Assembly: GCA_002269645.1 (NCBI GenBank)
Contig: NIVC01000286.1
Span: forward strand, 62,001 to 126,000
Length of the DNA: 64,000 nt
Direction: 5' to 3'
DNA from: Macrostomum lignano
Taxonomy: Eukaryota
The notes beneath the pieces are model-generated. The model ran no database searches and had not been told where the DNA came from. It saw only the letters and a list, made by a program, of their open reading frames with translations. Below are positions 24,801 through 63,145 of the stretch, piece by piece. The translations under genes and the position numbers were made by a program. The first letter of the stretch is position 1, and each line of letters starts with the position of its first letter.

Positions 24801-27800
24801 GTTTTAAATGGTATTATTAGGCCTAGTTCAAAATAATGTTTTCACTACTTTTCAAAGGGTCAATATAGAATGAAATACATAGTAAATAACTTTAAAATGC
24901 TTCTGATAGACTATGTTGCCTTTTTAATAGGGATTATTGAACAAAACTGAATTATAAACCATGGGACAAAATAATGTTGATAAAATATAAATAAAGCCAA
25001 AGTAGTTTCCATTTTTCATATATATTTATATTAGTTGCACCTAAAAATATGTTTAATGTTTATATTTTCTAGGTATTAAAGATCTGATCTAGTCCTTTTT
25101 GTATAATCTATATATTAATATATACAAGTATATTGCATAGAAAAGAATGATTTTTGTCAAAATTTTCATTGCTTTTTGTTTTTTTGCTTTTTTGTGCACA
25201 TCTTAGCAAGCATTCAACTTTTTTACAAGATAAGTTATATTCCTTCCCATTCCTTTAATATTTTTATTATTTGGTTAGAACTATTGCCTCACATAAAATT
25301 ATGCTACATATATTTCAAAATTTAACCTTCTTTACAGTAAGCATGATACATTTGTAAGGCCTTGTTAGACACAAAGGTAGATAAGAAGAATATATTCTCA
25401 GTATTAAATAGTCAAATAGCTTATTTTTAATAAATTATTGAGAAACAAAAAATTGCATTTGGCATATTGTAAATCCTGTAAATGCTTTTATCATGAATTA
25501 ACTTTGGTCTTGACCTTAAAAGGCTGTCTTTTTATTCACTTATGGAATAATTTAGTTATGTACTCCTACTCCCATCCGCTGCTTTAGAAACGCCTAGATG
25601 AGTACCAGAAGCTGAAGTCGAAGGGCGATCAACTCAGTCCGCAACAAGAGGAAGCCCTGGCCACCATGGGCTCTGTAGTTGGCAATCTAGAATTCGCTCG
25701 AGACGTTCTAACTCAAATTAGTTCTAGTCTGACTGAGCAGGAGAAGCTGGTGAAGAAAACTGAGAAACGGCAGCGGTTTGAACGGGAGAAGCGCGAAGTT
25801 GATATGCTGCGCAGCCTGCTCTCCATGCAGTCGCTGCTAGAAGAGATGGGCGGCGAGCAGACCAAGGAGCTGTTCACTGGGGAGTCGCCTGTGACAGGAT
25901 TGGCGCTGAGCAAGGCTCAGGTATGCGTGTTACCGTACATGCGGAACTCCACTCTTTGATTTACACCGGCCGTGTAACCTTTGGGTAAATGGCAGGAGTA
26001 ACTTTTAAGGCTAAATGCCTCGTCATCTAATTAGTACTTATTTGTACTTTTGATTTGCATCCTGGCTTTTAATTTGGTATGCTGAGATTAGAAACCACAT
26101 GCCCAAATTACACTGCGATTCTGGCGTTTAAGTCAACTTCAAGTCTGACCCCCTCCCTGAGCACAGATGCCTACGCTGACTTTCTCATTCTTAGGGGGGG
26201 GGGGGTTGGCCCTCGAGCGCTAATGGCTGTGTAAGTGGAACTGAAATTTCAACAGCTTATACAAATTAGTAATTAGAATAAACCAATTCGTTTTACAAAC
26301 AGTTGGACTCAATCGACGAAGTCTATCAAGCGATCACGCCGCGTAGAGAGCAGGAAAATGAGGCAGGCGCCGATGCCAGCTGGAGCGCACGGTTGCAGGC
26401 CTGCGCTGAGAATTGCGCCAGCCTGCTGGAGGCCAAGGACCGGCCGCTCTGTCCGGGTGTCAGCTATAAGGAGGCCCGCGAACTGCTGGACAAGTGAGTG
26501 ATTTGTTAATTGTTCAAATTGCACGTTTGCCCACATCAGTAGGTCATTTTAACTATCGGTGGAGTAGTTAAGCTACTCTCTCCAGACACGGATAGACAAG
26601 TCAAGCTACCCTCTCCAGACAGGGATAGACAAGTCAAGCTACCCGGAAGTTCAGTGGACAAGTTAAGACCCTCCTCGGACAGTTCGGTGGACAAGTTAAG
26701 CTACCCTCCCCGGACAGTTCGGTGGACAAGTTAAACTACCATCCCCGGACAGTTCGGTGGACAAGTTAAACTACCTTCCCCGGACAGTTCGGTGGACAAG
26801 TTAAACTACCCTCCCCTGTCCACCCCGCGCCCGCAGGCTGGCAGCTCTGCCTTATTTCACTGCCAACGCTGTCCCGAAAGTTGGCTTCGACAGCGCCGAC
26901 TCTGCAGGTATCGAGGACGGCCTCCTTCAGCCGGAGGAGGAACAACAGGCTCCGGTTGATTCGGCCGAAGCTGCTCCTCAGGCTGAAGAATCCGTCATTG
27001 CGCCGCCGGAGGCTCAACAGTTGGCGGCGCCGCCACCCCCGCCTCCGGTCACCGACAATGGCCATCTGGAACATCGCCTGCCCATGATGCTGCAGCAGCC
27101 ATCAACTGTCAGCGCTGTGGCTGAAGCTGCTGCAGCCTACACTCAGCCTGCAGCCGTTGCTCCAGTTGATTCTGCGCCAGCCCCCGAATCGTTAAACAGT
27201 CTACGCCAGATGGTGAAAGGCCAGTTCGAGTTTATTCAAGACTCCGAGCTGTCGGCGCATGGCGGCTCTGCGCCCCCGGTCGCTTCTGTGGAGTTCTCCG
27301 CTGCCTCCAATGAACAGGGCGGCAGCGGCGCTTGGGCGGACGACCTGCCTGACAGTGAACAGGTAAATGGTTTAAGGGGGCAGCTAATCCCTTCCCAGAT
27401 ATTCAGGGGGCAGCTAATCCTTTCCCAGATATTCAGGGGGCAGCTAATCCCTTCCCAGATATTCAGGGGGCAGTTAATCCCTTCCCATATATTCAGGGGA
27501 TTTGCTAATCCCTTTCCAGATATTCAGGGGGTTGCTAATCCCTTCCCAGATATTCAGGGGGCAGCTAATCCCTTCCCAGATATTCAGGGGGCAGTTAATC
27601 CCTTCCCATATATTCAGGGGATTTGCTAATCCCTTTCCAGATATTCAGGGGGTTGCTAATCCCTTCCCAGATATTCAGGGGGCAGCTAATCCCTTCCCAG
27701 ATATTCAGGGGGCAGCTAATCCCTTCCCATATATTCAGGGGATTTGCTAATCCCTTTCCAGATATTCAGGGGGTTGCTAATCCCTTCCCAGATATTCAGG

Positions 27801-28539
27801 GGGCAGTTAATCCCTTCCCATATATTCAGGGGGCAGCTAATCCCTTCCCAGATATTCAGGGGCAGCTAATCATATTTTATCTTGGTAATCCATTTAAAAA
27901 CAGGTCATTTTCCCATCACCCTAAATTTATTTTTCACAGCCTGTCCAGTCCTGGGCTGACTCATCATGGAGCGGCTCTGTGCAGCAGCAGCAGCCTCCTT
28001 CGGCTGCTCCTGGCTCCGAAGACGTATTCGCTTCGGCCACTCAGTCGGAGTTTCTGCGTGCCGATCAGCAGCAGCAGATGATGCAGCAGCATCCTCAGCA
28101 GTTCATGCACGGTCAGCAGCAGCCGCAGCAGGCCGGCTTCGAGAATGGATCTGGCGGCTACGGTGGCAGAGGGCGCGGACGCGGAGGTCCCGGAGGCGGC
28201 GGCGGTGGCCGCGGAGGTCCTGGAGGCGGCGGCGGGTATCGCGGAGGTGGAGGCCGAGATGGAGGAGGCGGCGGCTACCGTGGCAGCGGCGGTGGAGGCA
28301 ATCGCGGTTATCGCGGCGGTGGCGGCGGCGAGTTTCGCGGCGGCGGTGGTGGCGGAGGCTTCAACGACTACCGCGGCAGTCGCGGAGGCGGCGGCGGTAG
28401 CGGATTCGGGGGCGGATATGGCGGCGGAAACCGCGGCGGAGGCGGAGGTCGCGGCGGCGGCGGCGGCGGGTTCAATCGGCCGCAGCAGCAGCAGCGTGGC
28501 GGTGGAGTCTACAACCGCGGAGGCGGACCTCAGCACTGA
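21684..28539 (+). CDS. CAPRIN1: Caprin-1 (stress-granule RNA-binding protein), 5 exons, 588 aa
   Basis: Exons 21684-21800, 25588-25920, 26303-26493, 26837-27362, 27940-28539 in phase. MPS...EKKIRNLEKKKKRLDEYQ matches the HR1 DKKLRNLEKKKGKLDDYQ; also NLEFARD, LLEAKDRPLC-GVSYK, GQFEFIQDSEL (caprin FIQDS motif) and an RGG-rich C-terminus. Confidence 0.95.
22444..22841. mobile_element. hAT-like MITE nested in the larger element
   Basis: TIR TAGAGGTTGGACGGGAT versus atcccgtccgacctcta; 8-bp TSD atatacac/gtatacac. Confidence 0.8.
22854..23326. mobile_element. MITE with 8-bp TSD (hAT- or P-like)
   Basis: TIR ccatagttaggaaggtggc versus gccaccttcctgactatag; TSD acaccata/acaccaca. Confidence 0.72.
25588..25920 (+). 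CDS. CAPRIN1: Caprin-1 exon 2
   Basis: tttag acceptor; KRLDEYQ...NLEFARD; donor gtatgc. Confidence 0.93.
25983..26037 (+). other. Degenerate 28S rRNA helix 69-71 fragment (copy A)
   Basis: gggtaaatggcaggagtaact...aaatgcctcgtcatctaattagt matches the conserved eukaryotic LSU GGGTAAACGGCGGGAGTAACTATGACTCTCTTAAGGTAGCCAAATGCCTCGTCATCTAATTAGT with a central deletion. Confidence 0.8.
26303..26493 (+). CDS. CAPRIN1: Caprin-1 exon 3
   Basis: acag acceptor; LDSIDEVY...GVSYKEARELLD; donor gtgagt. Confidence 0.92.
26590..26815. repeat. About 35 bp minisatellite (acaagttaaactaccttccccggacagttcggtgg)
   Basis: About 6 tandem units. Confidence 0.88.
26837..27362 (+). CDS. CAPRIN1: Caprin-1 exon 4
   Basis: cgcag acceptor; KLAALPYF...GQFEFIQDSEL; donor gtaaat. 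Confidence 0.9.
27375..27870. repeat. 30 bp minisatellite (cagctaatcccttcccagatattcaggggg)
   Basis: Tandem units, 10-aa period. Confidence 0.95.
27940..28539 (+). CDS. CAPRIN1: Caprin-1 exon 5 (Q-rich and RGG-rich tail)
   Basis: ttttcacag acceptor in phase 0; open to TGA at 28537-28539. Confidence 0.9.
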   Translation, partial: PVQSWADSSWSGSVQQQQPPSAAPGSEDVFASATQSEFLRADQQQQMMQQHPQQFMHGQQQPQQAGFENGSGGYGGRGRGRGGPGGGGGGRGGPGGGGGYRGGGGRDGGGGGYRGSGGGGNRGYRGGGGGEFRGGGGGGGFNDYRGSRGGGGGSGFGGGYGGGNRGGGGGRGGGGGGFNRPQQQQRGGGVYNRGGGPQH

Positions 28540-30513: not shown

Positions 30514-31482
30514 CTTCGAGTGTGTCATAAGTAATGTCACTGATGTGAAAACAGACGAACTTGCAATCGCAGATGAACAAAACTGTACCACTTAACAACA
30601 TAGAGTCCCCCAATATCAATCACCCTCTGGCAGTGCTCATACAGCTTGTCCACCTCAGCCTGCAGGTGTTTTTCCTCCAACTGCCATAACCAGTGCAACG
30701 CAGCCTGTTTGACCTCTTCATGGTTTGCGAAACTCCTCTTGGAAAAGTCAGCCTTCAGTCATTTGAACAGGAATCTCTTGCAAAAGTTGAAGTCTGGGCT
30801 GTAGGGACTGTCAGAGCATATTCACTTGCCGTGCAGGCGGAAAATTCGAAACAGCCTTCAGGTGTGCAGCCGTGCGGTGTCCATCTGCCACAGAACCTCG
30901 TCCAGGTGACATGGATTTGACCGGAGATTGCACCAGAGGTCCCCAGTGTGCCGGAAAAAGTCGATAAAGTACTGGCCATCGACCTTGGTGTTCGGTGGAG
31001 TTGTGCAGATGGAGACCCGTTTGTTTGGCGTGAAGGCTACCAGCAGCATGGTCTTCTTGTCCGAGATGGACTTCCTAGTCACCATCGGCCTGAAGTCCCC
31101 AGCTCCCAGCCAGCAGCAATTGTCTGCCTTGCTGCCCTTGCCATCCAGGTGGAGCCAGCTTTCATCCTCAGCAACCAGGCAGTTTAGGATGTCATTCAAG
31201 CCACGGCTGCTAAACACCTTGCGGATCTGCTTGGTGCAGGCGTCTTGTCAAGATTCATGATGATTTTTGTTTGCTGCATAGATGATTTTTCATTGCGTTG
31301 CACTTGCTAAATCTGCTTGGTGTATTCTTGCGATAGCTTGGGCCATAAACAACCTATGCACGTCTCAAATGCACTGCTATTGCTTCACTAAGTATACTTT
31401 GCAGCTACACTACCCACAAGTCCATGTGCCTACATATTTTAGACAGAGGCCTGCAGTGACATTACTTATGACACACCCGAAG
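30514..31482 (-). mobile_element. Internally deleted mariner (Tc1/mariner) transposon, 969 bp
   Basis: 29-bp TIRs CTTCG(A/G)GTGTGTCATAAGTAATGTCACTG at 30514-30542 and 31454-31482 (1 mismatch); TA on both flanks; transposase remnants inside. Confidence 0.92.
30616..31250 (-). pseudogene. Mariner transposase pseudogene (catalytic domain only)
   Basis: LVAEDESW, KKTML, DGQYF, WQMDTARLHT and PYSPDFN motifs with in-frame stops; no N-terminal HTH region. Confidence 0.88.
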
Positions 31483-32539: not shown

Positions 32540-33142
32540 GGATAGAATCTGAATCTACCTGACCTGAATCTACCTGACCTGAATCTACCTGATAGAATCT
32601 GAATCTACCTGACCTGAATCTACCTGACCTGAATCTACCTGATAGAATCTGAATCTACCTGACCTGAATCTACCTGACCTGAATCTACCTGATAGAATCT
32701 GAATCTACCTGACCTGAATCTACCTGATAGAATCTGAATCTACCTGACCTGAATCTACCTGACCTGAATCTACCTGATAAAATCTGAATCTACCTGACCT
32801 GAATCTACCTGACCTGAATCTACCTGATAGAATCTGAATCTACCTGACCTGAATCTACCTGACCTGAATCTACCTGATAGAATCTGAATCTACCTGACCT
32901 GAATCTACCTGATAGAATCTGAATCTACCTGACCTGAATCTACCTGATCTGAATCTACCTGACCTGAATCTACCTGACCTGAATCTACCTGATCTGAATC
33001 TACCTGACCTGAATCTACCTGATAGAATCTGAATCTACCTGACCTGAATCTACCTGACCTGAATCTACCTGACCTGAATCTACCTGATAGAATCTGAATC
33101 TACCTGACCTGAATCTACCTGATGAAATCTGAATCTACCTGC
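32540..33142. repeat. 15/20 bp compound minisatellite (tgaatctacctgacc / gatagaatct)
   Basis: Tandem units starting about 50 bp beyond the MTHFD1 stop. Confidence 0.95.
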
Positions 33143-33194
33143 CAAAAACCTGGCCCTAGTGACGCTTCGTCACTTCAACAGTGAGTCAGTAAAA

Positions 33195-45400: not shown

Positions 45401-48400
45401 TACAATTACAAAGCAAACTAACCAACCTGAACAATTGCTAATCCTGGAGTAAAGTTGGGCACAGTTTGTCTGACTTCATCAATTTTAGTCTTGATAGCAG
45501 ATTTTACATCACTAAAAAGAAATTTTATATTGATTAGATAATTGCTAACTCATAATCACAAACAAAAAAGAATAAATACTAATTAGAATCATCATTATCA
45601 TATTAAAAAAGGACAAAAGACAGCTATAGATAGAAAATATAAAACTAAAAATGATAGATTTTTATAACTAGAAACTTAAAAAGAAACAAATCTAGGATTT
45701 TCCCAAAGAGGGTGAATTGACCCCTTTGACCTCTTTTCCTAAATTTGTCACTGAGTAATTGTTTGTTTTCCATTGGCTTTAACTTTTATAGAATAGTTAA
45801 TTCTTAATTTAGAAAGGTAGCAATTTTTAGATATATTAGTTATTCTTTGGCTTTATAGCATCTCTACCTATAAAAATGAAAACTCTGTATAAGTGTCTAT
45901 GGCCAATTTTGTTGCTATGGACTCCTAAACTGCTTAACCAAATTATACCAAATTTTACACCCACCCTAAACTTACTACAGAGAGTGTCTTAGGCTATATT
46001 AAAATTTCCTAGACTCAGGTCTTCTTACCTAAAAGTGCAAAAACTGCTCAAAATGCACAATTATTTCACTAAATCCTCCATAGCGCCGCTTGAAGACGAT
46101 CTACCAATCCTCTTCAAATTTGACACACTCAATCTTCAACTATTTTGACACAATCATGTAAAATTTTGAGTCTCAAAGTTAATCTTTTTTTGGCTGTTTT
46201 TGTCAGCAAGACAGCCACCCCAACCTCCACCTGCCTGCCTCTCCCAATCTGGGCCCAGATGTGCAAAAGGGGTTTCAAAATTGACAAACTTTCAGCTGTC
46301 ATAAGCTTGTTCCATGTAAAGCAATTCACTTCAAACTTGACACAATTCTTCATTGACTCATTTGCTGTCTAAATGTAAAGTTTTAACTCTGTAACTCATT
46401 CAGAACAGAAACTGTAAGCATGTGAAGTTTGTCTGCTTTTTTTGTTGTTAGAAAAATTTGAAAAATTCTAACAACTGTCCTCTTTTTTGGCAAACTCTAC
46501 AGAAGTTTAACAGTGGATGGCAATTGGCAAATCAAGGCAATCCAGCATGGTTTATAAAAGAAAAAGATTTATGAAAAGGCGATGCAATGCAATACAAGTC
46601 ATACCATGGAAATTTTACTATTAAGTTTTATCTAAAGGTAAATTTAAAATTGGCCTCCTAAGAAATACATATTTCCTTGGTTGTTAGACTGATACAGACT
46701 GTAGTGGAGCCAAAGATACAGATATGCAACTTCCTCTCAAGGCTGCAAATTGGCCAGAAAAATGACGTGATTGGCCACAAAGCATGAGAAAAATCATGAG
46801 TTACTTATTACGTTCCACAAACTGGCTTTTGAAGCAGGGGTCAGCAGACTTACCTCAAATGCCAGATAAAGAATCCAGCTCATGTGTGGGCCAGATGAGA
46901 GTGGTAAGGAGAAGGAATAGACTATTAGAAAAGAGGAGCAGCGAGAGGGATAAAAGAAAAGATAGAAGGTAAAAAGAGAAACAAATGATGAGGGGTGAGG
47001 ATGAGGAGAGTGAGGTGGGAGAAGAGAGGAGAGAAGAAGGAAGGAGAAGAGGGAGAGAGAGAGGGGCGAGAGAAGCAAGAGGAAAGTAGAGATAAGGAGA
47101 GAGGAGTAGGAGAGAGGAGAGAGGAGAAAGTAGAGATTAGAGAGTGAAGATGAGTGAACAGAAAGAAGAGAGAAGAGATAAGACAGGATTGAGAGAGGAA
47201 AGCAGAGAGGAGAGAGCATACTTGCGCAACCTCCGAAACTCGGTCGGCCATGCGACTTAGTTTTAACAAAAATGCGACGTAGTTTTTGGCCAAAAATGCG
47301 ACTTACATGTAAAAAAAACCCTAAAGCAAAATTAACGCAACTTTGGGTAAACGGCAGGAGTAACTATGATCGTCTTATTAAGCCAAAATGCCTCGTCAGC
47401 TACTTAGTACTACTCCTTGGTTATTTTTTTGGGTGGGCATTTTTGCGACTTCCTTGGTTGGCGGCCAAATTGGTCGGCCGGATCGGCCGACTTGGCCGAC
47501 TGTTGCGCATGTATGGGAGAGAGGAAAGAAGAGAATGGAGAGACAGTAGAGTAAAGGGAAGAGAGAAAAGATAAGGTTGTAGAGATGAGAGAGATGAAAT
47601 GAGAAATGAGAAATGAGAGATGAAGAAGAGAGAGGAGAGTAGAAAGAATACAGGAAGAGAGTATATAGAAGAGAGAAGAGAGGAGAGGAGAAAGGAAAGA
47701 GAGGAGTCAAAGTCAAAGATGTGAAATAAAAGAGTATAGATGAAAGAGATGAGAGAATGTATAAGAGAGTAAAGTTGACAGAAGAGAGGGGAGATGAGAG
47801 AACAGAGACAAGAGTAAACAGACAAGAGATGGGAGAGTAAAGAGAACAGAGGAGAAAGAGATTATGGAGACAAGATGAGAGAGGGGGAGAAGAGAAATAT
47901 GTGAGAGCAGAGAAGAGAGACAAAAGGGAGAAAGAAGTGGAGTAAGGAGAAAAAGGGGAGAGAATTGATAAACAGGGAAGAGAGAGAGGGGAGGAAAGAG
48001 AAGAATTAAAGAAGGGAGAAAGTAGAGAGAAGAGAGATGGGAAAGTGGAGAGTAGAGATAAGAGGGGAGAGAGAGAGAGGGGAGAGAAGAGAAGAAAGAG
48101 GAGAGGAGAGGAGAGAAGAGTGAAGAAAGAGGAGAGAGGAAGGAACAGGGAAGATGAGATGAGAGAGATGAGAGAGACAAGAAAAAAGAGAAATGTGAAG
48201 AAATAAAAGAGCAGAGATAAAAGAGAAAGAGAGAAAGGAGATATAAGAGAGCAAAGACAAGAGAGAAGAGAGGGGAGAAGACGAGAGAAGAGGGAAGTGA
48301 GGAAAGAAGAGAGAAGAGAAGAGATAGCAGGAGAGACAAAAGACAAGAGAGAATAGAGGAAACAGAAGAGAAGATGGAAGTTTCATTGTTTCAAAGGATC

Positions 48401-50942
48401 CAAGAGACGTGATGGAGGCAGAGGGAGAGGTCAGAGTTTTCCAATGCATGTTTTAAACAAACATTGCTTGATATTCTATGCAGCACCCCAGCCAATGAGA
48501 TCAATGCTTGCTACAAATCTTAATTTTACACAATTTTATTCAATTCTATGTTTACCTCAATCTCTATCCTATATACTAAAAAGTCCTAACTATTAACAAG
48601 TTTTTGTTTGTGTATGACTTTAGATTTTAGAACATAGGCAAAAAATAGTTTCTAAGCATTAGAATTCCCAGCGTTCAAAATCTATAGGTTTCAACATCTT
48701 ATCTCTACATATAAAAATGAAAACTCTGTCTGTCTGTGTGTGGACAATTTTGATAGCTATGGACTCCCAAACCGCTCAACCAAATGACACCAAACTTTAC
48801 ACCCACCCTAAACTTACTACGGAGAATGTCTTAGGCTACCTTTTAACTTCCTAGACTCAAGTCTTCCTACCTAAAAGTACAAAAAACTGCTCAAAATGCG
48901 CGATTTTTTCACTAAATCCTCCATAGCGCCGCTCCACTTCTACCGATTCTCTTCAAATTTGACACAGACAATCTTCAACTATTTTGGCACAATTGTATAA
49001 AATTTCAAATCTCAAAGTTAATCCTGAAAGCCGCTGTGCACTTTTAAAGTTAGGCTGTTTTTCTCAGCGTAGCAACCACCCCAACCTCCGCCCGCCTGCC
49101 TCTCTTTCCCGATACCGATCTGGGCCCAGATGTGTAAAAGGGTTTCAAAATTGACTAACTTTCAGCTCCCATAAGTTTGCTCCACGTAAAGGGATTGACT
49201 TCAAACTTGACACAATTCTTCATTGACTCATTCTCTATCTAAATGTAAAGTTTCAACTCTAACTCAACCGAAAAAGAAACTGTAAGCATGTGAAGTTTGT
49301 CTGCTTTTTCTGTTGTTTGCCGCTCATCCAACTCATTCCCCCAGACGAATGATCAGGCGATAGGGCTCAATGTACATAGCGAATGTACAGTGTTTTGGAA
49401 TAACTTTTTTATAGCCTTCTCGCACCCCGAGAGTGGAGAGGCTACGTTTAGCCATAACAGTTTAATTAGTGAGAAATTCTAATCACTGCCCTCCCCTCCT
49501 CTGTATTGGCAAACTCTGCAGCAGTTTAACAGTGGATGGCAATTGGCAAATCGAGGGAATCCAGCAAAAAAGCGAAAGCGAAAAGCGGTTTGTAAAAGCG
49601 AAAGATTTATGAAAAGGCGATGCGATGCAATGCACAATGCAATAAAACCCTACTAAATTAGGCACACCCATGGAAATTTTAGGTTTCTTTTAAAAGTAGT
49701 GTGTAAATTTTAAATGGCCTCCTAAGAAATGCGTATTTCCTTGGTTGTTAGACTGATGCAGACTGCAGTGGAGCTGAAAATATAAAAATTCCTTTCAGGG
49801 CTGCAAATTGGCAAGAAAGATGACGTGATCAAAGCATGAGAACAACGATGAGAGTAGTACGTCCACAAACTGGCTTTCGAAGCAGGGATCGGCAGACTTT
49901 TACTTCAAAAGCCAGATAAAGAATCCAGATTATGTGCGGGCCAGATGAGAGTGGAAAGGAGAAGGAATAGACTATTAGAAGAGAGGAGAGGCGAGAGGGG
50001 GGATAAAGAAAACATGGAAGATAAGAGGAGAGACAAGTGGTGAGGAGAGAGCAGAGAAGAAGGGAGGAAGAAGCGAGAGGAGGGGAGAAAGGAGGGAGAG
50101 GAAAGAGTAAATGTGAGAGAGGGGAGAGATGAGACAGAGGATCGATGAGAGGAGAGTAGAGAAGAGTGAGAAGAGAGTAGAGATGAGAGAGCAGAAAGAA
50201 GATGACAGAGGGTCAAGAGGAGAGGAGAGATTAGAGAGGAGAGAGTAGAAAGGATAGAGAAGAGAGGAGATAAGAGGGGGAGAGAGGAGTGAGAAGAAAA
50301 GAGATAGAGATAAGAGAGGGGTGTAAGAAGAGGGGAGAAAGGAGAGATGAGATTGTAGAGATGAGACAGATTAAAGGAGAGATGAGAGAGTAAAGATGAG
50401 AGATGAAAAAGGTGAGAGGAAAGTGCAGAGAGACGAGATAGAGATAAGAGAGGGGTGTAAGAAGAGGGGAGAAAGGAGAGATGAGATTGTAGAGATGAGA
50501 CAGATTAAAGGAGAGATGAGAGAGTAAAGATGAGAGATAAAAAGGTGAGAGGAAAGTGCAGAGAGACGAGAGAAAATAATAGAGGAGAGAGAGTATAGAA
50601 GAAAGAAGAGAAAAGAAGAGAGGAGTAAGGAAAGAGAGGAGTCAGAAGAGGTGAAGAGAAGAGTACAGAGGAGATAAGTGAGAGAACGTATAAGAGAGTA
50701 AAGATGACAGATGAGAGAGCAGAGATGAGGGTGAACAGACGAGAGATGGGAGAGTAGAGAGAACAGAGGAGAGATAAGAGAGAAGAGATTACAGAGACTA
50801 GAGGAGAGAGGAGAGACAGGGAGAGAGAAGAGGAATTAGGAGAATGAAGAGGGAAGAGAGGAGAAGATAGATGGGAGAGGAGAGATAAGAGAGAGAGAGA
50901 GAGGGAGAAAGAGAGAGAGAAGGGGAGAAGAGAGAGAGAGAA

Positions 50943-54773: not shown

Positions 54774-54827
54774 NNNNNNNNNNNNNNNNNNNNNNNNNNN
54801 NNNNNNNNNNNNNNNNNNNNNNNNNNN
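54774..54827. other. Assembly gap (54 N)
   Basis: Run of N. Confidence 1.
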
Positions 54828-54998
54828 AAGTTTTGTAATAAACTACATGTAGCATCTCTTTGCAATATACCTCAGCCGTTTCTTGTAAGCCTTGACACGT
54901 CAGTAATTCCACCCCCCCTCCCACAAGCTTTAACATATCAACTTCCCCCCTGACATCTCAGCGATGCCCCCCATATGAAATCTAAAAAAATATGTCCA

Positions 54999-55050
54999 CC
55001 TAACACTAACCCTAGCCTAACTCTAACCCTAACCCTAACCCTAACCCTAA
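54999..55050. repeat. Short interstitial telomere-like (CCCTAA)n tract
   Basis: taaccctaaccctaaccctaaccctaa plus degenerate units. Confidence 0.7.
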
Positions 55051-55977
55051 AGCACTGACATTTCAGTAATTCACTCCAAGAGTCATTATAGCACTACAGC
55101 ATTATAGCGATTCCCTGCAAGCCTTGACATCGTAGGGATTCCCAAATGAATCTCTTAACTTCGACATGAAGCTTCTTTTAATTTTTACATTACGCTTTTT
55201 CTATCAGCGATCCCTCCCCTGAGGAAGCAACAAATAATGTATTAAAAAGTTTTCAATAAACTACATGCAGCTTCTGACTTTAGCCTTGACATTTCAGCTA
55301 TTCCCCCTGTAAGCCTTGAAATGTCAGCGATGCCCCCATAAACCTTGAAATCTGAAAAATCCCCTGTTAACCTTGAAACCCGCTAAAATCTAACCATCAA
55401 TCCAAACCTGACCTAAACCTAACTTTAACCCAACCTAAAGCCTTGAAATCTCAGCAATTCTTCTCCCCTAAGCCTTGACATTTTAGTGATTCCTTCTTTA
55501 AGAATCACAGCACTATAACGATTCCCTCCAAGCCTTGACATCGTAGCAATTCCCAAATGAATCTTTTAACTTCGACAGGACTTTTCTTTTATGTATACAT
55601 AGTGCTTCTTTTCTTTTTTACATGACTCTTCTTCTATCAGCGCCCCCGTGGCGAGCCAACAAAGAATGTAATAAAAAATTGATCGGTATTGATCGGTAAA
55701 TGCACTAATGATGCATCTAGGGTTTGATTCTCAAGTCAAAGTCTAGATGCTCAAACGAAAGACAGTATGGTCAACTCAGGGACTACTTAAACTTAAGGAC
55801 TAGTTTAAGTAGTCCCTGGGTCAACTGAAGATTAATGTGCTTAAATGAAGGTCACGATACTCAATTAAAAGTTACATTGCTCAAAATAAAGATCACAATA
55901 GTCAAGTTAATAGAGTCTGTTCATGATACTGAAATTACATTTATGCTAGATTAAAATTTGCCTCACCGACCATGCAG

Positions 55978-56181
55978 TTCGGACACTGTGGTACTCGGCG
56001 GCACCTCACAGAAAGGCAACTGGAGCACGGAGGTGTCAGCAGTTGACAAAGCGGACATCCTGCACGAGTAACATCTCTGTGGCCGTCACTTGCCTCAGCT
56101 CCCATTGTGCAGGACGCTGTCGGTCTGCGGCCTGGTCGTGAGCAGGTTCGCTTGGAGAGGGAAATTCGACCCGACTGTACT
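55978..56181 (+). CDS. DAO: D-amino acid oxidase penultimate exon with an apparent 1-nt frameshift
   Basis: SDTVVLGGTSQKGNWS...ILH, then in another frame VTSLWPSL...GLRPGREQVRLERE (DAO TVTLGG..GNW and GFRPVRPQIRLERE); donor gtgagt in phase 0; frameshift near 56063-56067. Confidence 0.82.
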
Positions 56182-56227
56182 GTGAGTTCGAATTTAGTAG
56201 CCTTTTATCTGACTTACGATTCATACA

Positions 56228-57736
56228 GTTCGAGTTGAGTATAGCTTCTCAACCTGATTCCGTTCGAGTTGAGTAGTTTCTCAACCTGATTCAGTTCGAG
56301 TTGAGTATAGCTTCTCAACCTGATTCAGTTCGAGTTGAGTATAGCTTCTCAACCTGATTCAGTTCGAGTTGAGTAGTTTCTCAACCTGATTCAGTTCGAG
56401 TTGAGTAGTTTCTCAACCTGATTCAGTTCGAGTTGAGTATAGCTTCTCAACCTGATTCAGTTCGAGTTGAGTATAGCTTCTCAACCTGATTCAGTTCGAG
56501 TTGAGTAGCTTCTCAACCTGATTCAGTTCGAGTTGAGTATAGCTTCTCAACCTGATTCCGTTCGAGTTGAGTAGTTTCTCAACCTGATTCAGTTCGAGTT
56601 GAGTATAGCTTCTCAACCTGATTCAGTTCGAGTTGAGTAGCTTCTCAACCTGATTCAGTTCGAGTTGAGTATAGCTTCTCAACCTGATTCAGTTCGAGTT
56701 GAGTATAGCTTCTCAACCTGATTCAGTTCGAGTTGAGTAGCTTCTCAACCTGATTCAGTTCGAGTTGAGTATAGCTTCTCAACCTGATTCAGTTCGAGTT
56801 GAGTATAGCTTCTCAACCTGATTCAGTTCGAGTTGAGTAGCTTCTCAACCTGATTCAGTTCGAGTTGAGTATAGCTTCTCAACCTGATTCAGTTCGAGTT
56901 GAGTAGCTTCTCAACCTGATTCAGTTCGAGTTGAGTAGCTTCTCAACCTGATTCAGTTCGAGTTGAGTATAGCTTCTCAACCTGATTCAGTTCGAGTTGA
57001 GTAGCTTCTCAACCTGATTCAGTTCGAGTTGAGTATAGCTTCTCAACCTGATTCCGTTCGAGTTGAGTAGTTTCTCAACCTGATTCAGTTCGAGTTGAGT
57101 ATAGCTTCTCAACCTGATTCCGTTCGAGTTGAGTAGTTTCTCAACCTGATTCCCTTCGAGTTGAGTAGTTTCTCAACCTGATTCAGTTCGAGTTGAGTAT
57201 AGCTTCTCAACCTGATTCAGTTCTAGTTGAGTAGTTTCTCAACCTGATTCCGTTCGAGTTGAGTAGTTTCTCAACCTGATTCAGTTCGAGTTGATTATAG
57301 CTTCTCAACCTGATTCAGTTCGAGTTGAGTATAGCTTCTCAACCTGATTCCGTTCGAGTTGAGTAGCTTCTCAACCTGATTCAGTTCGAGTTGAGTATAG
57401 CTTCTCAACCTGATTCAGTTCGAGTTGAGTATAGCTTCTCAACCTGATTCAGTTCGAGTTGAGTAGTTTCTCAACCTGATTCCGTTCGAGTTGAGTAGTT
57501 TCTCAACCTGATTCCGTTCGAGTTGAGTATAGCTTCTCAACCTGATTCCGTTCGAGTTGAGTAGTTTCTCAACCTGATTCAGTTCGAGTTGAGTAGCTTC
57601 TCAACCTTATTCAGTTCGAGTTGAGTAGTTTCTCAACCTGATTCCGTTCGAGTTGAGTATAGCTTCTCAACCTGATTCCGTTCGAGTTGAGTAGTTTCTC
57701 AACCTGATTCAGTTCGAGTTGAGTAGCTTCTCAACC
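56228..57736. repeat. 32/34 bp minisatellite with an internal GTTGAG...CTCAAC hairpin
   Basis: cagttcgagttgagtatagcttctcaacctgatt units filling the last DAO intron. Confidence 0.96.
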
Positions 57737-57789
57737 CCAGCAATCATTTATTCGAGGGTTAATAAGCTATAAAACTCTCAAACTTGCAG

Positions 57790-57936
57790 ATCTATCACAA
57801 CTACGGTCACGGCGGCTCAGGTTTGACAATTTTCTGGGGCTGTGCCAAGGAAACAGTTCGATTGCTTCTAGAAGACATTGGAAGTTATTCAAAGCAACAA
57901 AATGGCGAACGAAACGGCATAAAAGCGGCACTTTAA
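57790..57936 (+). CDS. DAO: D-amino acid oxidase terminal exon (right-arm copy)
   Basis: ttgcag acceptor; 48 codons IYHNYGHGG...GIKAAL then TAA. Confidence 0.85.
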
Positions 57937-59416
57937 AAGCAGAAAATGATTTAAACTTACTTACCAAACACTAAAAAACGGATTTAATTAACTGTCATGC
58001 CTTCGTCACTAATTCAGAAGCTCCTACTAATTATATCTGCATAAAACTTGCTCGACTCATAATTACATGTACCTCTTTACAAAAACATTTACTTGTAATC
58101 CATGTACATGTAACCTTCATCATTTTACTATATACTGTATTTTAGCTGCGCAGAAGCAAAGCTGAAGCTGAGCAAATATTTTACTTTGAACATGAAATGT
58201 TACAGAAGAATGTCACAAGGATTTCATGGAAAGAGAAAACGACAAATGCCTGCAGGTTTGCAGAAATGTTTAGGAGGCATTTGTAAAGGATCGAGAACAG
58301 TGATGCAGTGGTGGAGGAAGCTCGTGCATGACTGCATCTAGGTGCGCCCCCAGCCAAGACGGTTACGGTAAAGAAGAAGCTAGCTGAGAAAAATTTTGAG
58401 CACAATGTGTCACAGTTTACCACGTGTATCAGGCGCCGTAATGCAATAAACCCCCCCTATTTCAAAATCACATACTACACTACGTCATAATACATACTAA
58501 ACAGTTAACTGTAATTAGCTAGTGAAACACATGCGTTTTTATTTGCATCTTATGGATGTAGATAATTTATAGACTAGGCGGTAACTCGACTAAAAACTCG
58601 TAAAAGACCCGGCCGAGTTCGCGTCATTTTTACACGGAATTTTTCCAGTCAAGCTTCATGCACAACCCCCAATATGCAACCTTCATGTATTACTGTTTAT
58701 GCTGGTCCTTTCGAAATTCACAATCCCAAATTTGGGATAGCATTTAATGGTAGACTTCCGCCATTGCTACGGATCAAGGACTACTAAACAACTCTTAACA
58801 ATAGTCCTTGGAACGGATATGGCTACGTACATGTACGGGAAGTTACGGAGGTTTTAGACAAAGCTGCACATTTACAGATAATATATTGGTTACGGGGACA
58901 TATGTTTCCCATATCTAGTTCCTGGAATTTAGGATTCAAGCAACAGCTAGGGATTTTCAATGCCATGTCCACGTTTTTTTCACTTTGAAAGGAGAGCTCT
59001 AAAGTCTACTTGCCATTTGGGGTGGGGAATTTCTGAGGTTGTATTCTGGTTTTGGCTCTCTTTTTTGAAACAATAAATTTGAAACGTGCGAATTGTAACT
59101 ATCACCCATCAGTAACCTATTTAAACAAAAGCAACCTTGCACACCTCACGTTTTATCAATTTTTTATCAGTAATAATGAAATCACTCATATTTTTAATTT
59201 TTATTATTTTCTATGAAGTATTGTTATCGTCATAATCTCGGTTTTATCTTATCATGGTGCCTCTCACGCGCTTCGCTTTTGCGACAAACACCACCAATGA
59301 TCGCGATAGGTCTTCGTAAGTGCTTCAGCTTGAAATTTAAGTTTCTTTACTTTTCTTTACAAAATAAAGTTCTTCATCAATCAAAAGCTTTTTTCGGCTA
59401 CACTACAAAAGTCAAC

Positions 59417-59451
59417 ATGGCAAAGCTGATTTCAGGAAAGGATATTTCTGC
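59417..59451 (+). CDS. MTHFD1: MTHFD1 exon 1, second copy (rest presumably beyond the window)
   Basis: ATGGCAAAGCTGATTTCAGGAAAGGATATTTCTGC|gtaag, identical to 52744-52710. Confidence 0.85.
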
Positions 59452-61139
59452 GTAAGCTATTTGTAGTAGTAATATACTATAGCATAGCCTAAATACCTAA
59501 TACTCTTATTTTAGTATCTTATGACACTTATTAATAATTTTTGTCAGCAGGGATGTACCCAAGGCGGGGGGACACTGGGGAAATGTCCCCCAAAATTTTT
59601 TACAGCTTTTTTATTTTGCTTTTCAGTTTTTATTTCTACGTTATGCATGCATTAAAGAAATAGATTGATGTCTCATGTCTCTGCCCCCCCCCCTGGCTGA
59701 TATAAATCCTTGATTGGCTTGAATCCAGGCTACATGCCTTAGCCTGTTTGTCAGGATTTTATTTTAAGATGTCAAGATATCAGGATTAAGATAGGTTCAT
59801 GTCCAATGTAAAAATAGGCCTAGGCATATGCCGCATATATAGGCCCTATAGGCCCTATAGGCCCTGGTTCCTGGTATAAGGGTTAGATAGGAATAGGTCA
59901 ATAGGACAGAATTTTATTTTTATTATTTGCTATAGGATTAGTAGGTAGGTAGCAATTTTTAATTTTTAAGAATCATTTGCTAAACTTAAAATTGTACTAA
60001 TTATAACTGGAGTTTAGCAATCAATTCTTGATTCTTGAATGCCAATAGAGCCTATAGGCCTAGTCTAGCCTAATTGTGAAATTTCATTCGAATTTTTAGG
60101 CAATAATATAAGCCCTATAGGCCTAATCTATATTAATTACAGTCCTACCTAGTAATGTGCTAGTTTTTTTTCTTATAAACAACAAGCTGTTGATACCCGC
60201 AGATTTTGAACCCAGGGAATTCCAATCCCTGGAACTGAGAATCCCCAGAAATTCTGAAATCTAAGGCCATACACAAACAAAAACTTGTTAATAGTTAGTA
60301 GGATAGAGGTAGACATAAAATGGACATATTGGTGTAAGGATTTGAGGCAAACATTGATATTGTTGGCTGGGGTACTGCACAGAATGTCAGGCAATGTCTG
60401 TCTGACTTTAAAACATGTATTGGCAAACTCTGGCCTCTCCCTGACTCTCCCTATGTCCATTGGATCCTTTAAAATTTCTATCGTCTCTTCTGTTTCCTTT
60501 CTTCTCTCTCGTCCCTCGTCTCTCCTCTCTCTTCTCTCCTCTCTTCTCTCGTATCTTCCCTCATCTCTTCCTTATTCTTTTCTCTCTCCTCTTCTCTCTC
60601 CTTTCTACTTTTCGTTTTCTCTCCTCTCCTCTCCTCTCTCCTCTCTCCATCTTCTTTCGTATCCTCCCTCATCTTTCTTCTCTTTCATATCTCTTATCTC
60701 ATCTCTTCCCTCTTCTTTTCTCTCTCCTCTCCTCTCCCCTCTCTACTTTTTCGTTTTCTTTCTCCTCTCCTCTCTCCTCTCTCCCCTCTTCTCTCGTCTC
60801 TTCCTTCTCCTCTCTATTCTTTTCTCTCATATCTTAACTCTCTCCTCTACTCTCTCATCTCTTAACTCTCTCTTCTACTCTCTCATCTCTCCTCTCTACT
60901 CTTTCCTCTCTCCTCTCTCCCCTTTTCTCTCGTCTCTTCCCTCACCTCTTTCCTCTCTCTCTTTCCTTTTATCTCTTTTCTTGTTTTATCTCTTCTCTCT
61001 CCCTCGTCGCTCGTCTCTTCAATCATTTCTCTTCTCTCTTGTCTCTTCCCTCACCTCTCTTCTCTCTCGTCTGCTCTTTCATCTCTCCTTTCTCTTCTTT
61101 TATCTTTTCTCAATTATCTCTTCTCGTTTCTCTTTGCTC

Positions 61140-61233
<94 letters not shown>

Positions 61234-62867
61234 TTCTCTCTCTCTCTTTCTCCCTCTCTCTCTCTCTTTCTCCCTCTCTCTCTCTCTCTTATCTCTCCTC
61301 TCCCATCTATCTTCTCCTCTCTTCCCTCTTCATTCTCCTAATTCCTCTTCTCTCTCCCTGTCTCTCCTCTCTCCTCTAGTCTCTGTAATCTCTTCTCTCT
61401 TATCTCTCCTCTGTTCTCTCTACTCTCCCATCTCTCGTCTGTTCACCCTCATCTCTGCTCTCTCATCTGTCATCTTTACTCTCTTATACGTTCTCTCACT
61501 TATCTCCTCTGTACTCTTCTCTTCACCTCTTCTGACTCCTCTCTTTCCTTACTCCTCTCTTCTTTTCTCTTCTTTCTTCTATACTCTCTCTCCTCTATTA
61601 TTTTCTCTCGTCTCTCTGCACTTTCCTCTCACCTTTTTTATCTCTCATCTTTACTCTCTCATCTCTCATTTAATCTGTCTCATCTCTACAATCTCATCTC
61701 TCCTTTCTCCCCTCTTCTTACACCCCTCTCTTATCTCTATCTCGTCTCTCTGCACTTTCCTCTCACCTTTTTCATCTCTCATCTTTACTCTCTCATCTCT
61801 CCTTTAATCTGTCTCATCTCTACAATCTCATCTCTCCTTTCTCCCTCTTCTTACACCCCTCTCTTATCTCTATCTCTTTTCTTCTCACTCCTCTCTCCCC
61901 CTCTTATCTCCTCTCTTCTCTATCCTTTCTACTCTCTCCTCTCTAATCTCTCCTCTCCTCTTGACCCTCTGTCATCTTCTTTCTGCTCTCTCATCTCTAC
62001 TCTCTTCTCACTCTTCTCTACTCTCCTCTCATCGATCCTCTGTCTCATCTCTCCCCTCTTCTCACATTTACTCTTTCCTCTCCCTCCTTTCTCCCCTCCT
62101 CTCGCTTCTTCCTCCCTTCTTCTCTGCTCTCTCCTCACCACTTGTCTCTCCTCTTATCTTCCATGTTTTCTTTATCCCCCCTCTCGCCTCTCCTCTCTTC
62201 TAATAGTCTATTCCTTCTCCTTTCCACTCTCATCTGGCCCGCACATAATCTGGATTCTTTATCTGGCTTTTGAAGTAAAAGTCTGCCGATCCCTGCTTCG
62301 AAAGCCAGTTTGTGGGACGTACTACTCTCATCGTTGTTCTCATGCTTTGATCACGTCATCTTTCTTGCCAATTTGCAGCCCTGAAAGGAATTTTTATATT
62401 TTCAGCTCCACTGCAGTCTGCATCAGTCTAACAACCAAGGAAATACGCATTTCTTAGGAGGCCATTTAAAATTTACACACTACTTTTAAAAGAAACCTAA
62501 AATTTCCATGGGTGTGCCTAATTTAGTAGGGTTTTATTGCATTGTGCATTGCATCGCATCGCCTTTTCATAAATCTTTCGCTTTTACAAACCGCTTTTCG
62601 CTTTCGCTTTTTTGCTGGATTCCCTCGATTTGCCAATTGCCATCCACTGTTAAACTGCTGCAGAGTTTGCCAATACAGAGGAGGGGAGGGCAGTGATTAG
62701 AATTTCTCACTAATTAAACTGTTATGGCTAAACGTAGCCTCTCCACTCTCGGGTGCGAGAAGGCTATAAAAAAAGTTATTCCAAAACACTGTACATTCGC
62801 TATGTACATTGAGCCCTATCGCCTGATCATTCGTCTGGGGGAATGAGTTGGATGAGCGGCAAACAAC

Positions 62868-63145
62868 CCTATTGCAGCGCATGGCTTAAGTACGCCAGAC
62901 GCCTACACAACCTGCGCCACGCTGTGAAATGACTTACCTGTGAAAGAAACCCTAAAGCAAAATTAACGCAGTTTTGGGTAAACGGCAGGAGTAACTATGA
63001 CTGTCTTATCAAGCGTAAATGCCTCGGCATCTAATTAGTACCGCGCCGCGCCGTACTAATCGCTGCTCGCCGTACGCGCCGCGCCGCGCTGTATTAGATC
63101 CGCGCCGGACGCCGTCCGCCAAAATGCCCATGCGCTGCAATCAGG
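62868..63145. mobile_element. 278 bp MITE present only in the right arm, carrying the 28S-like cassette (copy D at 62976-63041)
   Basis: TIR cct(g)attgcagcgcatgg versus ccatgcgctgcaatcagg; TSD gcaaacaac at 62859-62867 and 63146-63154 (9 bp, or 7 bp if the TIR is one base longer); empty site at about 49313-49321. Confidence 0.9.

What the first reader, a model, noticed from the sequence alone, without database searches (positions are those of the whole stretch)
25983..63041. Four dispersed copies of the 28S rRNA R2/homing-endonuclease target region, most variable at the cleavage core
Seen: at 25983-26037, 44979-45040, 47345-47410 and 62976-63041 a 55-66 bp cassette matches the conserved LSU sequence GGGTAAACGGCGGGAGTAACTATGACTCTCTTAAGGTAGCCAAATGCCTCGTCATCTAATTAGT, with no other rDNA around it. 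The flanks are well kept (copy D has about 3 mismatches over about 55 nt). The central AAGGTAGCC differs in every copy (ATCAAGCGT, ATTAAGCCA, a deletion, a T/A-rich replacement). Shared changes (GGCA for GGCG; TTAGTAC in three copies) indicate one repeat family. Established: this is helix 69-71, which holds the R2 retrotransposon insertion site and the I-PpoI/I-CeuI-type homing sites. Inference: a high-copy intronic family derived from the rDNA parasite target, in which the cut site has been lost or scarred. It could be a decoy sink for R2-type endonucleases, a record of cut-and-repair events, or a source of rRNA-mimic or antisense RNAs. I do not recall a description of such a family, but cannot search.
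Basis: partly seen in the sequence, partly recalled or inferred. Interest (0 to 1): 0.8.

Follow-up and report, generated by a model that had tools for sequence, protein, structure and literature searches.

The report
28S rDNA fragment carried by flatworm MITEs
The four rRNA-like cassettes are real, but they are the internal piece of small cut-and-paste transposons (MITEs) in the flatworm Macrostomum lignano, which explains their dispersal; the one odd point is that the two flanks of the captured 28S piece stay almost identical to rRNA while its middle has been overwritten.

Summary
Four + strand cassettes at about 25983, 44979, 47345 and 62976 match eukaryotic LSU rDNA, and nothing else in the window does. 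The window is Macrostomum lignano assembly Mlig_3_7, contig NIVC01000286.1.

The cassettes are not free-standing. Copies C and D lie inside complete non-autonomous TIR elements of 299 and 277 bp with target-site duplications. D has an exact empty site in the window and in a second contig, so it inserted very recently or is polymorphic. C is absent from older paralogous copies. A and B are older, and their element ends cannot be defined.

C and D have different termini. They share only a 111-bp core, and that core is the 28S-derived piece (28S -72 to +35 around the R2 nick).

Mismatches to 28S cluster at -12 to +6: arms 2-7 of 47, middle 9-13 of 17. The middle has the same length as in 28S. Uniform decay is rejected.

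The best reading is a single capture of rDNA by a TIR transposon, a known kind of event. The decoy, scar and antisense ideas are untested. The conserved arms overlap published R2 protein footprints, which is only a lead. Copy number and the native 28S could not be obtained.

The parts
25979..26038 (+). Copy A: 28S-derived module with two deletions (about -18..-11 and +1..+3). It keeps TTAAGG. It lies 62 nt downstream of an exon end, within the span of an annotated 588-aa gene. Element ends are not definable.
   Evidence: present at the same place in contig NIVC01000073.1
44971..45041 (+). Copy B: 28S-derived module and the most diverged copy (arms 7 of 47). The centre is T/A-rich but has the 28S length. 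The upstream CAAGCG is still 28S-like. It lies in an MTHFD1 intron, antisense to the gene.
   Evidence: present in L060
47217..47515 (+). Element C: complete 299-bp non-autonomous TIR element, inserted in GA-rich low-complexity DNA.
   Evidence: TIR pair found. The single strand folds with z = -4.7. It is absent from the paralogous copies at about 50.2 kb and 61.9 kb.
47217..47230 (+). Left TIR of C: CATACTTGCGCAAC.
47502..47515 (-). Right TIR of C: CATACATGCGCAAC on the - strand, matching the left TIR at 13 of 14.
47209..47216 (.). Left target-site duplication of C, GGAGAGAG. The right copy is at 47516-47523. The context is low-complexity, so this is weaker evidence than for D.
   Evidence: (read directly)
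47300..47410 (+). Core of C: 111 bp shared with D at 88%. 47329-47410 aligns to LSU rDNA.
62868..63144 (+). Element D: complete 277-bp non-autonomous TIR element. The end bases are ambiguous by 1-2 nt.
62868..62884 (+). Left TIR of D: CCTATTGCAGCGCATGG.
63128..63144 (-). Right TIR of D: CTGATTGCAGCGCATGG on the - strand. The inner 14 nt are 100% complementary to the left TIR.
62858..62867 (.). Left copy of the duplicated target GGCAAACAAC of D. The right copy is at 63145-63154. The TSD is 7-10 bp, depending on which end bases belong to the TIR.
62931..63046 (+). Core of D: 28S-derived module aligning to LSU rDNA over 108 nt (28S -72..+35). It is followed by a 13-bp hairpin, ATTAGTACCGCGC / GCGCCGTACTAAT.
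49304..49325 (-). Empty site of D in the other arm of the inverted duplication, with one copy of GGCAAACAAC. The same empty site is in contig NIVC01000073.1.
48466..54773 (.). Left arm of the inverted duplication. It is 98.9-99.9% identical to the reverse complement of 57385-64000 and ends at the assembly gap inside a 32-bp satellite.
57385..64000 (.). Right arm of the inverted duplication. It carries element D as the only large difference from the left arm.
54774..54827 (.). Assembly gap of 54 N. It is also present in the public record. It lies between the left-arm satellite and a 1.4-kb unique spacer.

Best explanation
The cassettes are the internal, 28S-rDNA-derived module of small non-autonomous cut-and-paste DNA transposons (MITEs, a 'Pack-TIR'-type capture) of Macrostomum lignano.

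Shown:
- Two copies sit in complete TIR elements with target-site duplications.
- One of them (D) has precise empty sites, so it moved very recently. It must have been mobilised in trans, because the elements are 277-299 bp and have no coding capacity.
- The only sequence shared by the two otherwise unalignable elements is the piece homologous to LSU rDNA, about 108 nt from 28S -72 to +35 around the R2 nick.

Inferred:
- The piece was copied once from rDNA into a TIR element. The likeliest route is filler or template-switch DNA during gap repair, since rDNA is an abundant template.
- It was then inherited, and either exchanged between MITE lineages with different termini or retained while the termini turned over.
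- The cleavage core was overwritten early as a block. C and D share the altered core, and its length is unchanged.
- The two arms have stayed 85-96% identical to 28S, while the upstream part and the middle are about 25-65% identical. Uniform neutral decay cannot produce this. Either the arms are held by constraint at the level of the element, or they are refreshed by short-tract conversion from the many rDNA copies that stops at the diverged core. I rate 'something maintains the arms' at about 0.6 and cannot say which mechanism it is.
- Nothing indicates that the cassette acts for the host.
For: Reality of the match:
- each arm occurs 4 times against 0.01 or fewer expected.
- rDNA contigs hit only these four sites.

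Transposon structure:
- TIRs of C (13 of 14) and D (14 of 14, about 17 with one indel).
- D is a clean 277-bp insertion flanked by a duplicated GGCAAACAAC. The uninterrupted site is at 49304-49325.
- a third copy of the locus, on contig NIVC01000073.1, is also empty. The three copies differ by only 5-6 substitutions in about 5.5 kb.
- C plus GGAGAGAG is absent from two older paralogous copies.
- the elements fold as TIR-closed hairpins (z -2.0 and -4.7).

The shared core is the rDNA piece:
- C and D share only 47300-47410 / 62931-63041, at 88%.
- that core aligns to LSU rDNA over 81 nt (C) and 108 nt (D).

Mosaic conservation:
- arms 2-7 of 47 mismatches against middle 9-13 of 17, Fisher p about 1e-5 per copy. 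The densest mismatch block starts at -13 or -12 in all three full-length copies. C against D gives arms 3 of 47 and middle 5 of 17 (p = 0.026).

Not an assembly artefact, and host identity:
- A, B and C are present at the same positions in an independent contig.
- the window is identified as M. lignano.

Precedent:
- PMC8277862 (listed) reports capture of host sequence by TIR elements in animals.
- PMC10946416 tabulates rDNA-derived modules in transposons. None is of this kind.
Against: - Only four copies, two of them close relatives, could be examined. No second copy of either the C-type or the D-type element is in the window, so 'family' rests on the shared core.
- A and B have no demonstrable TIRs or TSDs. 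A TIR-like 14-mer 47 bp upstream of A is at chance level.
- The superfamily is undetermined. The TSD is 7-10 bp, and the TIRs do not fit the hAT YARNG start.
- No transposase partner was found.
- The native M. lignano 28S was not available, so the state at -25 (GGCA against GGCG) and in the upstream part is assumed from other eukaryotes.
- A single capture followed by passive decay does not explain the conserved arms.
- Character conflict hints at recombination or more than one capture. A keeps TTAAGG like 28S. B keeps the 28S-like CAAGCG upstream, yet has a centre closer to that of C and D.
Confidence: 0.8

Rival explanations
1. The module is an R2-type target mimic. The arms are kept because an rDNA-specific protein binds them, such as the R2 endonuclease/reverse transcriptase or another protein that recognises this 28S DNA. 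Copies with an intact cleavage core would be cut and interrupted, so only lineages with a destroyed core spread. The elements would then act as uncleavable binding sinks or hitch-hikers.
For: - The module spans about the 60-bp R2 protein footprint (-40 to +20).
- The kept arms, -36..-12 and +7..+28, overlap published footprints at -37..-25, -21..-15, +8..+15 and +17..+20. The overwritten block covers the nick and the -2..+6 contact (PMC11204384; nick position from the oligonucleotides in PMC13000458).
- R2 lineages exist in flatworms (PMC5035012).
- An unrelated metagenomic eukaryote has tandem repeats of the same 28S segment outside rDNA (L026).
Against: - There is no R2 element, no rDNA and no R2-interrupted cassette in the DNA available.
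- Whether M. lignano has R2 at all is unknown. Two flatworm R2 families have lost 28S specificity.
- This whole 28S region is universally conserved, so overlap with any footprint is partly guaranteed.
- There is no evident benefit to a DNA transposon from binding a retrotransposon protein.
- Sample size is four.
Confidence: 0.07
2. The cassettes are independent orphan rDNA fragments or rDNA pseudogene pieces, inserted at chromosome breaks rather than carried by a transposon.
For: rDNA is an abundant donor. Fragments and tandem repeats of this same 28S stretch occur outside rDNA in other organisms. A and B lack demonstrable element ends.
Against: - A, C and D share derived boundaries and changes: TTTGGG upstream, and an end at TTAGTAC.
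- C and D share a 111-bp diverged version at 88%, which is far closer to each other than to 28S.
- C and D are bounded by TIRs and TSDs, with empty sites.
Confidence: 0.05
3. The elements are SINE-like retroposons with a 28S-derived body, in the manner of SINE28 or of SINE superfamilies with a conserved central domain.
For: A 60-110-bp core conserved between elements with different flanks is how SINE superfamily central domains look (PMC4824008). SINE28 shows that 28S can seed a SINE.
Against: - There is no A-rich or simple-repeat tail.
- There is no tRNA-, 5S- or 7SL-like head. ARAGORN finds nothing in the elements and Rfam finds nothing.
- Both complete copies end in inverted repeats and have short TSDs flush with those repeats.
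Confidence: 0.03
4. The opposite strand encodes a small RNA that is antisense to 28S rRNA, either a guide-like RNA or a precursor of small interfering RNAs.
For: The minus strand carries two stretches of about 22-25 nt with near-perfect complementarity to 28S.
Against: No Rfam family matches at gathering or relaxed thresholds. Reading the reverse complement shows no C/D or H/ACA box arrangement next to the complementary stretches. The complementarity is far longer than that of guide RNAs. No expression data were available.
Confidence: 0.03

Closest known systems
Pack-TIRs / Pack-MULE-type capture of host sequence by TIR DNA transposons (animals: Tan et al. 2021, PMC8277862)
   Same: It is a short non-autonomous TIR element with a TSD whose internal region is a copied fragment of a host gene.
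   Different: The captured piece is from multicopy rDNA, not a protein-coding gene. The same captured piece is found in elements with different termini. It shows mosaic conservation rather than uniform decay.
Transposons with rDNA-derived modules: SINE28 (28S 3' end), SINE3/AmnSINE1 and Cassandra/Ajax (5S), Pokey (IGS repeats); tabulated in PMC10946416
   Same: It is a mobile element that carries a piece of rDNA as part of its body.
   Different: Those are retroposons using a promoter or a 3' end, or IGS repeats in a piggyBac. Here a MITE carries the helix 68-71 stretch of 28S. No such entry is in that review's table.
Fish R2 lineage with a 28S-like sequence in its 3' UTR (Kojima et al. 2016, PMC5035012)
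   Same: It is a mobile element carrying a diverged copy of 28S sequence from near the R2 site. The authors suggest it helps pairing with the target.
   Different: That is an autonomous, 28S-specific retrotransposon. Here the carriers are DNA transposons inserted in ordinary genomic sites.
Pokey / mPok of Daphnia (piggyBac that inserts at the TTAA of this same 28S site, with MITE derivatives)
   Same: It is a DNA-transposon family with MITEs linked to the same 28S site.
   Different: Pokey inserts into the 28S site. The M. lignano elements carry the site inside themselves. Their TSDs are 7-10 bp, not TTAA.
SINE superfamily central domains (CORE, V, Deu, Meta; PMC4824008)
   Same: A roughly 60-110-bp core is conserved among elements whose other parts differ, and its function is unknown.
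   Different: Those elements are retroposons with tRNA or 5S heads and tails. No rRNA origin came up for those domains in the passages read.

Membership tests
MITE / non-autonomous TIR DNA transposon | Terminal inverted repeats at both ends | tested here: met
   C: 14 nt, 13 of 14. D: 14 nt at 100% (about 17 nt with one indel). Not demonstrable for A and B.
MITE / non-autonomous TIR DNA transposon | Target-site duplication flush with the TIRs, and an empty site lacking the element and one TSD copy | tested here: met
   D: GGCAAACAAC is duplicated, and empty sites are at 49304-49325 and in L060. C: GGAGAGAG is duplicated, and the element is absent from two paralogous copies.
MITE / non-autonomous TIR DNA transposon | Small size and no coding capacity | tested here: met
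   The elements are 277 and 299 bp. Neither lies in a way that gives it an ORF of its own.
MITE / non-autonomous TIR DNA transposon | Many copies with the same termini, and an autonomous partner with matching TIRs | not testable with these tools
   Only about 73 kb of this genome was reachable. No second C-type or D-type element is in it.
hAT superfamily | 8-bp TSD and TIRs starting YARNG | tested here: inconclusive
   The TSD is 8 bp in C and 7-10 bp in D. The TIRs start CATAC and CCTAT, which does not fit YARNG (recalled consensus). The superfamily is left open.
Pack-TIR (captured host fragment) | The internal region is homologous to a host gene located elsewhere | tested here: met
   The internal 81-108 nt align to LSU rDNA, E down to 5e-15. 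The species' own 28S was not available for comparison.
28S rRNA gene or rDNA pseudogene | Contiguous rDNA beyond the short segment | tested here: not met
   Full rDNA contigs match only 52-108 nt at each site. No LSU model hit.
Functional R2 / I-PpoI target site | Intact cleavage core CTCTTAAGG|TAGCCAAAT | tested here: not met
   9-13 of 17 positions from -11 to +6 are changed in B, C and D. A has deletions. The core is taken from the oligonucleotides in PMC13000458.
Functional R2 / I-PpoI target site | Flanking protein-contact regions present | tested here: met
   The arms -36..-12 and +7..+28 are 85-96% identical to 28S and overlap the published footprints. Binding itself is not testable here.
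SINE (SINE28-like or central-domain superfamily) | Small-RNA-derived head with a Pol III promoter, an A-rich or repeat tail, and no TIRs | tested here: not met
   There is no tRNA-like head, no Rfam match and no tail. TIRs are present.
snoRNA or other curated RNA family | Match to a covariance model | tested here: not met
   Nothing at the cassettes at the gathering threshold or at E up to 10.

The most novel reading that the evidence does not exclude
The 28S module is kept in these MITEs because its two arms are bound by a protein that recognises the rDNA target, an R2-type element's DNA-binding domains or a host rDNA-binding factor. The cleavage core was selected away. Hundreds of mobile, uncleavable copies of the R2 landing site would then titrate or redirect an rDNA-specific parasite. 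This would be a transposon-borne decoy of another transposon's target.
Probability: 0.07. Interest if true: 0.75.

Novelty: new member of a known kind. Interest (0 to 1): 0.35.

Why it matters
As it stands, this adds a DNA-transposon example to the short list of mobile elements that carry rDNA pieces. It also shows a MITE that moved very recently in the M. lignano laboratory genome, which is useful for annotating a repeat-rich model flatworm. rRNA-like hits in its introns should be masked as transposon sequence, not read as rDNA or as RNA genes.

The unexplained part is the mosaic: the arms stay like 28S while the cleavage core is overwritten. A genome-wide census could show within-family constraint on the arms. 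The module would then be a rare case in which the origin of a conserved transposon core is known and its binding partners can be guessed. That would make the long-standing question of why such cores are conserved directly testable.

Tried and rejected
- Rfam at gathering and relaxed thresholds found nothing at the cassettes. The only relaxed hits are spurious matches in minisatellites.
- The metagenome scan for the family-specific left arm returned 58 loci. Almost all are genuine LSU rDNA of organisms that natively have GGCAGGAG, plus rDNA interrupted after TTAAGG and some tandem repeats. None belongs to the window's family.
- I tried to collect more M. lignano DNA through transposon proteins. 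The reverse-transcriptase ORF in the window gave only short anonymous contigs and UniRef-only M. lignano entries with no contigs. The only extra DNA obtained is the sister contig, which holds the same A, B and C.
- TIRs for A and B: a TIR-like 14-mer upstream of A is at chance level. By eye, an AT-rich inverted pair around B (about 44897 / 45088) is too weak to claim.
- Searches for other copies of the C or D termini, or of the upstream core motif, in the window found none.
- Allelic differences between the window and L060 are too few to compare rates. There are 0-4 substitutions per element, none in an arm.
- Literature searches for a MITE with a 28S fragment, or for M. lignano repeats of this kind, found nothing specific.
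- Pfam did not confirm my reading of the gene around A as caprin-like.
- Chance similarity, orphan rDNA, SINE and snoRNA readings were rejected for the reasons given under rival explanations.

Full report
**1. The observation**

I read the four places directly. Each arm of the cassette was then searched with up to three mismatches.
- GGTAAACGGCAGGAGTAACT occurs four times against 0.01 expected.
- AAATGCCTCGTCATCTAATTAGT occurs four times against 0.00 expected.
- All hits are on the + strand, at 25984, 44979, 47346 and 62977 for the left arm, with the right arm 29-40 nt downstream.

As an independent check I used sixteen genuine LSU rDNA contigs of several kb, obtained from the metagenome scan. 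They hit the window only at these four sites and only with this segment, E 1e-5 to 5e-15. So the similarity to 28S is real and no other rDNA is present. A profile of the four copies finds no weaker copies.

**2. Where the window comes from**

A concatenation of the MTHFD1 exons on the minus strand finds a Macrostomum lignano protein at 98% identity. The next best hits are at about 55-60%. The DNA around that gene in assembly GCA_002269645.1, contig NIVC01000286.1, is 100% identical to window 23195-54773 and 54828-62864, including the 54-N gap. The window is therefore that contig.

By the public gene spans, A lies inside a 588-aa gene, and B and C lie inside the MTHFD1 gene span (window 33195-52864, minus strand).

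**3. The assembly gap**

The gap at 54774-54827 lies at the inner end of a 6.3-kb left arm (48466-54773). That arm is 98.9-99.9% identical to the reverse complement of 57385-64000. The break falls inside a 32-bp satellite, which is 352 bp long on the left and 1.5 kb long on the right arm.

A second contig of the same locus, NIVC01000073.1, also ends in that satellite. Whether the inverted arrangement is a true palindrome or an inverted join of allelic or homeologous sequence cannot be decided here.

No cassette is near the gap, so their existence does not depend on it. If the right-hand piece is misoriented, D would be on the other strand, and D and its empty site would be alleles.

**4. What the cassettes sit in**

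*Copy D.*
- Its flanks, 62276-62867 and 63145-63741, match 49902-49312 and 49321-48725 at 99.5-100%.
- The alignment shows a clean insertion of 277 bp, bounded by CCTATTGCAGCGCATGG and its inverted copy. It is flanked by a duplicated GGCAAACAAC that is single at the other site.
- The third copy of the locus, in the sister contig, is also empty. The three copies differ by only 5-6 substitutions over about 5.5 kb.
- D is therefore a very recent or still polymorphic insertion.

*Copy C.*
- It lies in a 299-bp element with the TIRs CATACTTGCGCAAC / GTTGCGCATGTATG and a duplicated GGAGAGAG.
- The element is missing from two older paralogous copies of the surrounding GA-rich segment.

Both elements fold as TIR-closed hairpins and are far too small to encode anything. 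These are the defining features of non-autonomous TIR transposons.

The TSD of 7-10 bp and the TIR starts do not identify a superfamily. For A and B I could not define ends. A, B and C are present at identical positions in the sister contig, so they predate the split of the two copies and are not assembly artefacts.

**5. What is shared between copies**

C and D are alignable only over 111 bp (47300-47410 against 62931-63041, 88%). Their termini and subterminal motifs differ. Aligning each element to real LSU rDNA gives the following.
- D is homologous to 28S over 108 nt.
- C is homologous over 81 nt, B over 71 nt and A over about 64 nt.

The shared core of C and D is therefore the 28S-derived piece. 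It is much closer between C and D than either is to 28S. So it descends from one already diverged copy, not from two fresh captures. A, C and D also share TTTGGG at the 5' boundary and end at TTAGTAC, after which they diverge completely.

**6. The mosaic**

I numbered positions from the R2 bottom-strand nick (AAGG|TAGCC), taken from the oligonucleotides in PMC13000458.

| Copy | Arms (-36..-12 and +7..+28) | Middle (-11..+6) | Fisher p |
|---|---|---|---|
| D | 2 of 47 mismatches | 9 of 17 | about 1e-5 |
| C | 3 of 47 | 10 of 17 | about 1e-5 |
| B | 7 of 47 | 13 of 17 | about 1e-5 |

- The densest mismatch block starts at -13 or -12 in all three copies.
- The regions were chosen after seeing the data, but the same block recurs in each copy, and A's two deletions fall in it.
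- The middle has exactly the 28S length in B, C and D. In D it contains an unbroken run of eight mismatches. This looks like a block replacement rather than gradual decay or an indel scar.
- The part upstream of the left arm (C and D only) is about 60-65% identical to rDNA.
- Between C and D, the arms differ at 3 of 47 positions and the middle at 5 of 17 (p = 0.026).

I cannot say from four copies whether the arms are held by selection on the element, refreshed by short conversion tracts from rDNA, or inherited as a mosaic from the source.

GGCA instead of GGCG is the native LSU state in many eukaryotes, usually with a compensating CTCTTTTAAGG. It may simply be the native state in this species.

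**7. Relation to R2**

Published footprints of R2 proteins are about -40 to +20 overall. Contacts lie at -37..-25, -21..-15, -2..+6, +8..+15 and +17..+20 (PMC11204384). The kept arms overlap the outer contacts, and the overwritten block covers the nick and the central contact.

The whole region is universally conserved in rRNA, so any kept part will overlap something known. R2 occurs in flatworms, and two flatworm families have lost 28S specificity (PMC5035012). Whether M. lignano has one is unknown.

**8. Other readings tested**

- RNA families: none at any threshold.
- tRNA-like heads: none in the elements.
- Tails: none.
- Antisense guide RNA: no box arrangement on the opposite strand.
- Orphan rDNA fragments: contradicted by the shared derived boundaries and by the TIR and TSD structure.

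**9. Comparison with what is known**

Capture of host fragments by TIR elements is known in animals (PMC8277862, listed). Transposons with rDNA-derived parts are known: 5S heads, SINE28 and the Pokey IGS repeats. A fish R2 lineage carries a 28S-like stretch in its 3' UTR.

I found no description of a MITE carrying the helix 68-71 / R2-site stretch, nor anything on this family in M. lignano. Repbase and Dfam could not be searched, so prior cataloguing cannot be excluded.

**10. Verdict**

Its dispersal is explained by ordinary cut-and-paste transposition of small elements that once captured a piece of rDNA. This is a new member of a known kind of element.

The pattern of kept arms and an overwritten core is statistically clear but rests on four copies. 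It is the only feature that could raise the interest. A genome-wide census would settle it.

Noticed in passing
window 48466-54773 and 57385-64000: There is a near-perfect inverted duplication of at least 6.3 kb. Its 1.4-kb unique spacer is 54828-56225, and 32-bp satellite arrays lie at the inner ends. The assembly gap falls in the left array, and a sister contig ends in the same satellite. It is either a true palindrome or an inverted mis-join.
   Followed up: partly
window 45860-48400, 48466-51990 and 60285-64000: An older third copy, 72-82% identical, of the same GA-rich segment lies next to the young pair. The region has therefore been duplicated at least twice.
   Followed up: partly
L026 471-641 and 2606-2799 (metagenome contig Ga0256846_1003208): In an unrelated, unidentified eukaryote, 70-71-bp tandem repeats are made of 28S about -41 to +35 with a nearly intact R2 core (TTTAGGTAGCC). 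They are embedded in 40-bp satellites and are not in rDNA. L044 (51-bp units), L012 (61 bp) and L001 (111 bp) repeat the left arm alone. The same 28S stretch seems prone to amplification outside rDNA.
   Followed up: partly
L002, L005, L015, L022, L023, L033, L035, L056, L058: These are LSU rDNA copies whose sequence breaks off within or just after TTAAGG and continues as unrelated DNA. They are probably rDNA-site-specific insertions (R-elements, introns or Pokey-like) in various environmental eukaryotes.
   Followed up: no
window 2-19500, 26566-28250, 32540-41010, 43347-44476: Tandem-repeat load is very high. It includes a 3.8-kb (TCTG)n array at 11134-14917, an (ACAG)n array at 16069-17412, and many 20-40-bp minisatellites, several of them inside introns. 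The relaxed Rfam hits to CsrB and mir-929 are artefacts of these arrays.
   Followed up: partly
window 41799-42674 (-) and 30858-31217 (-): A degenerate non-LTR reverse-transcriptase fragment lies in an MTHFD1 intron (Pfam RVT_1, just under the cut-off). A short ORF that I read as a mariner/Tc1-like transposase remnant has no Pfam match.
   Followed up: partly
L060 (NIVC01000073.1) between the positions of A and B: The sister contig has about 8.9 kb more DNA between copies A and B than the window has. This is presumably variation in tandem-array length or an extra insertion.
   Followed up: no
window 63034-63060; also 47404-47411 and 26029-26042: The 3' boundary of the module (TTAGTAC) sits in a palindrome in three copies. 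In D it is a 13-bp stem. In C it is TAGTACTA. In A it is a near-palindrome, AATTAGTACTTATT. This may be a trace of how the rDNA piece was joined to the element.
   Followed up: no
window 39618-39709 (+): ARAGORN calls a 92-nt tRNA-Ser(GGA) overlapping an MTHFD1 exon on the opposite strand. It is probably a false positive.
   Followed up: no
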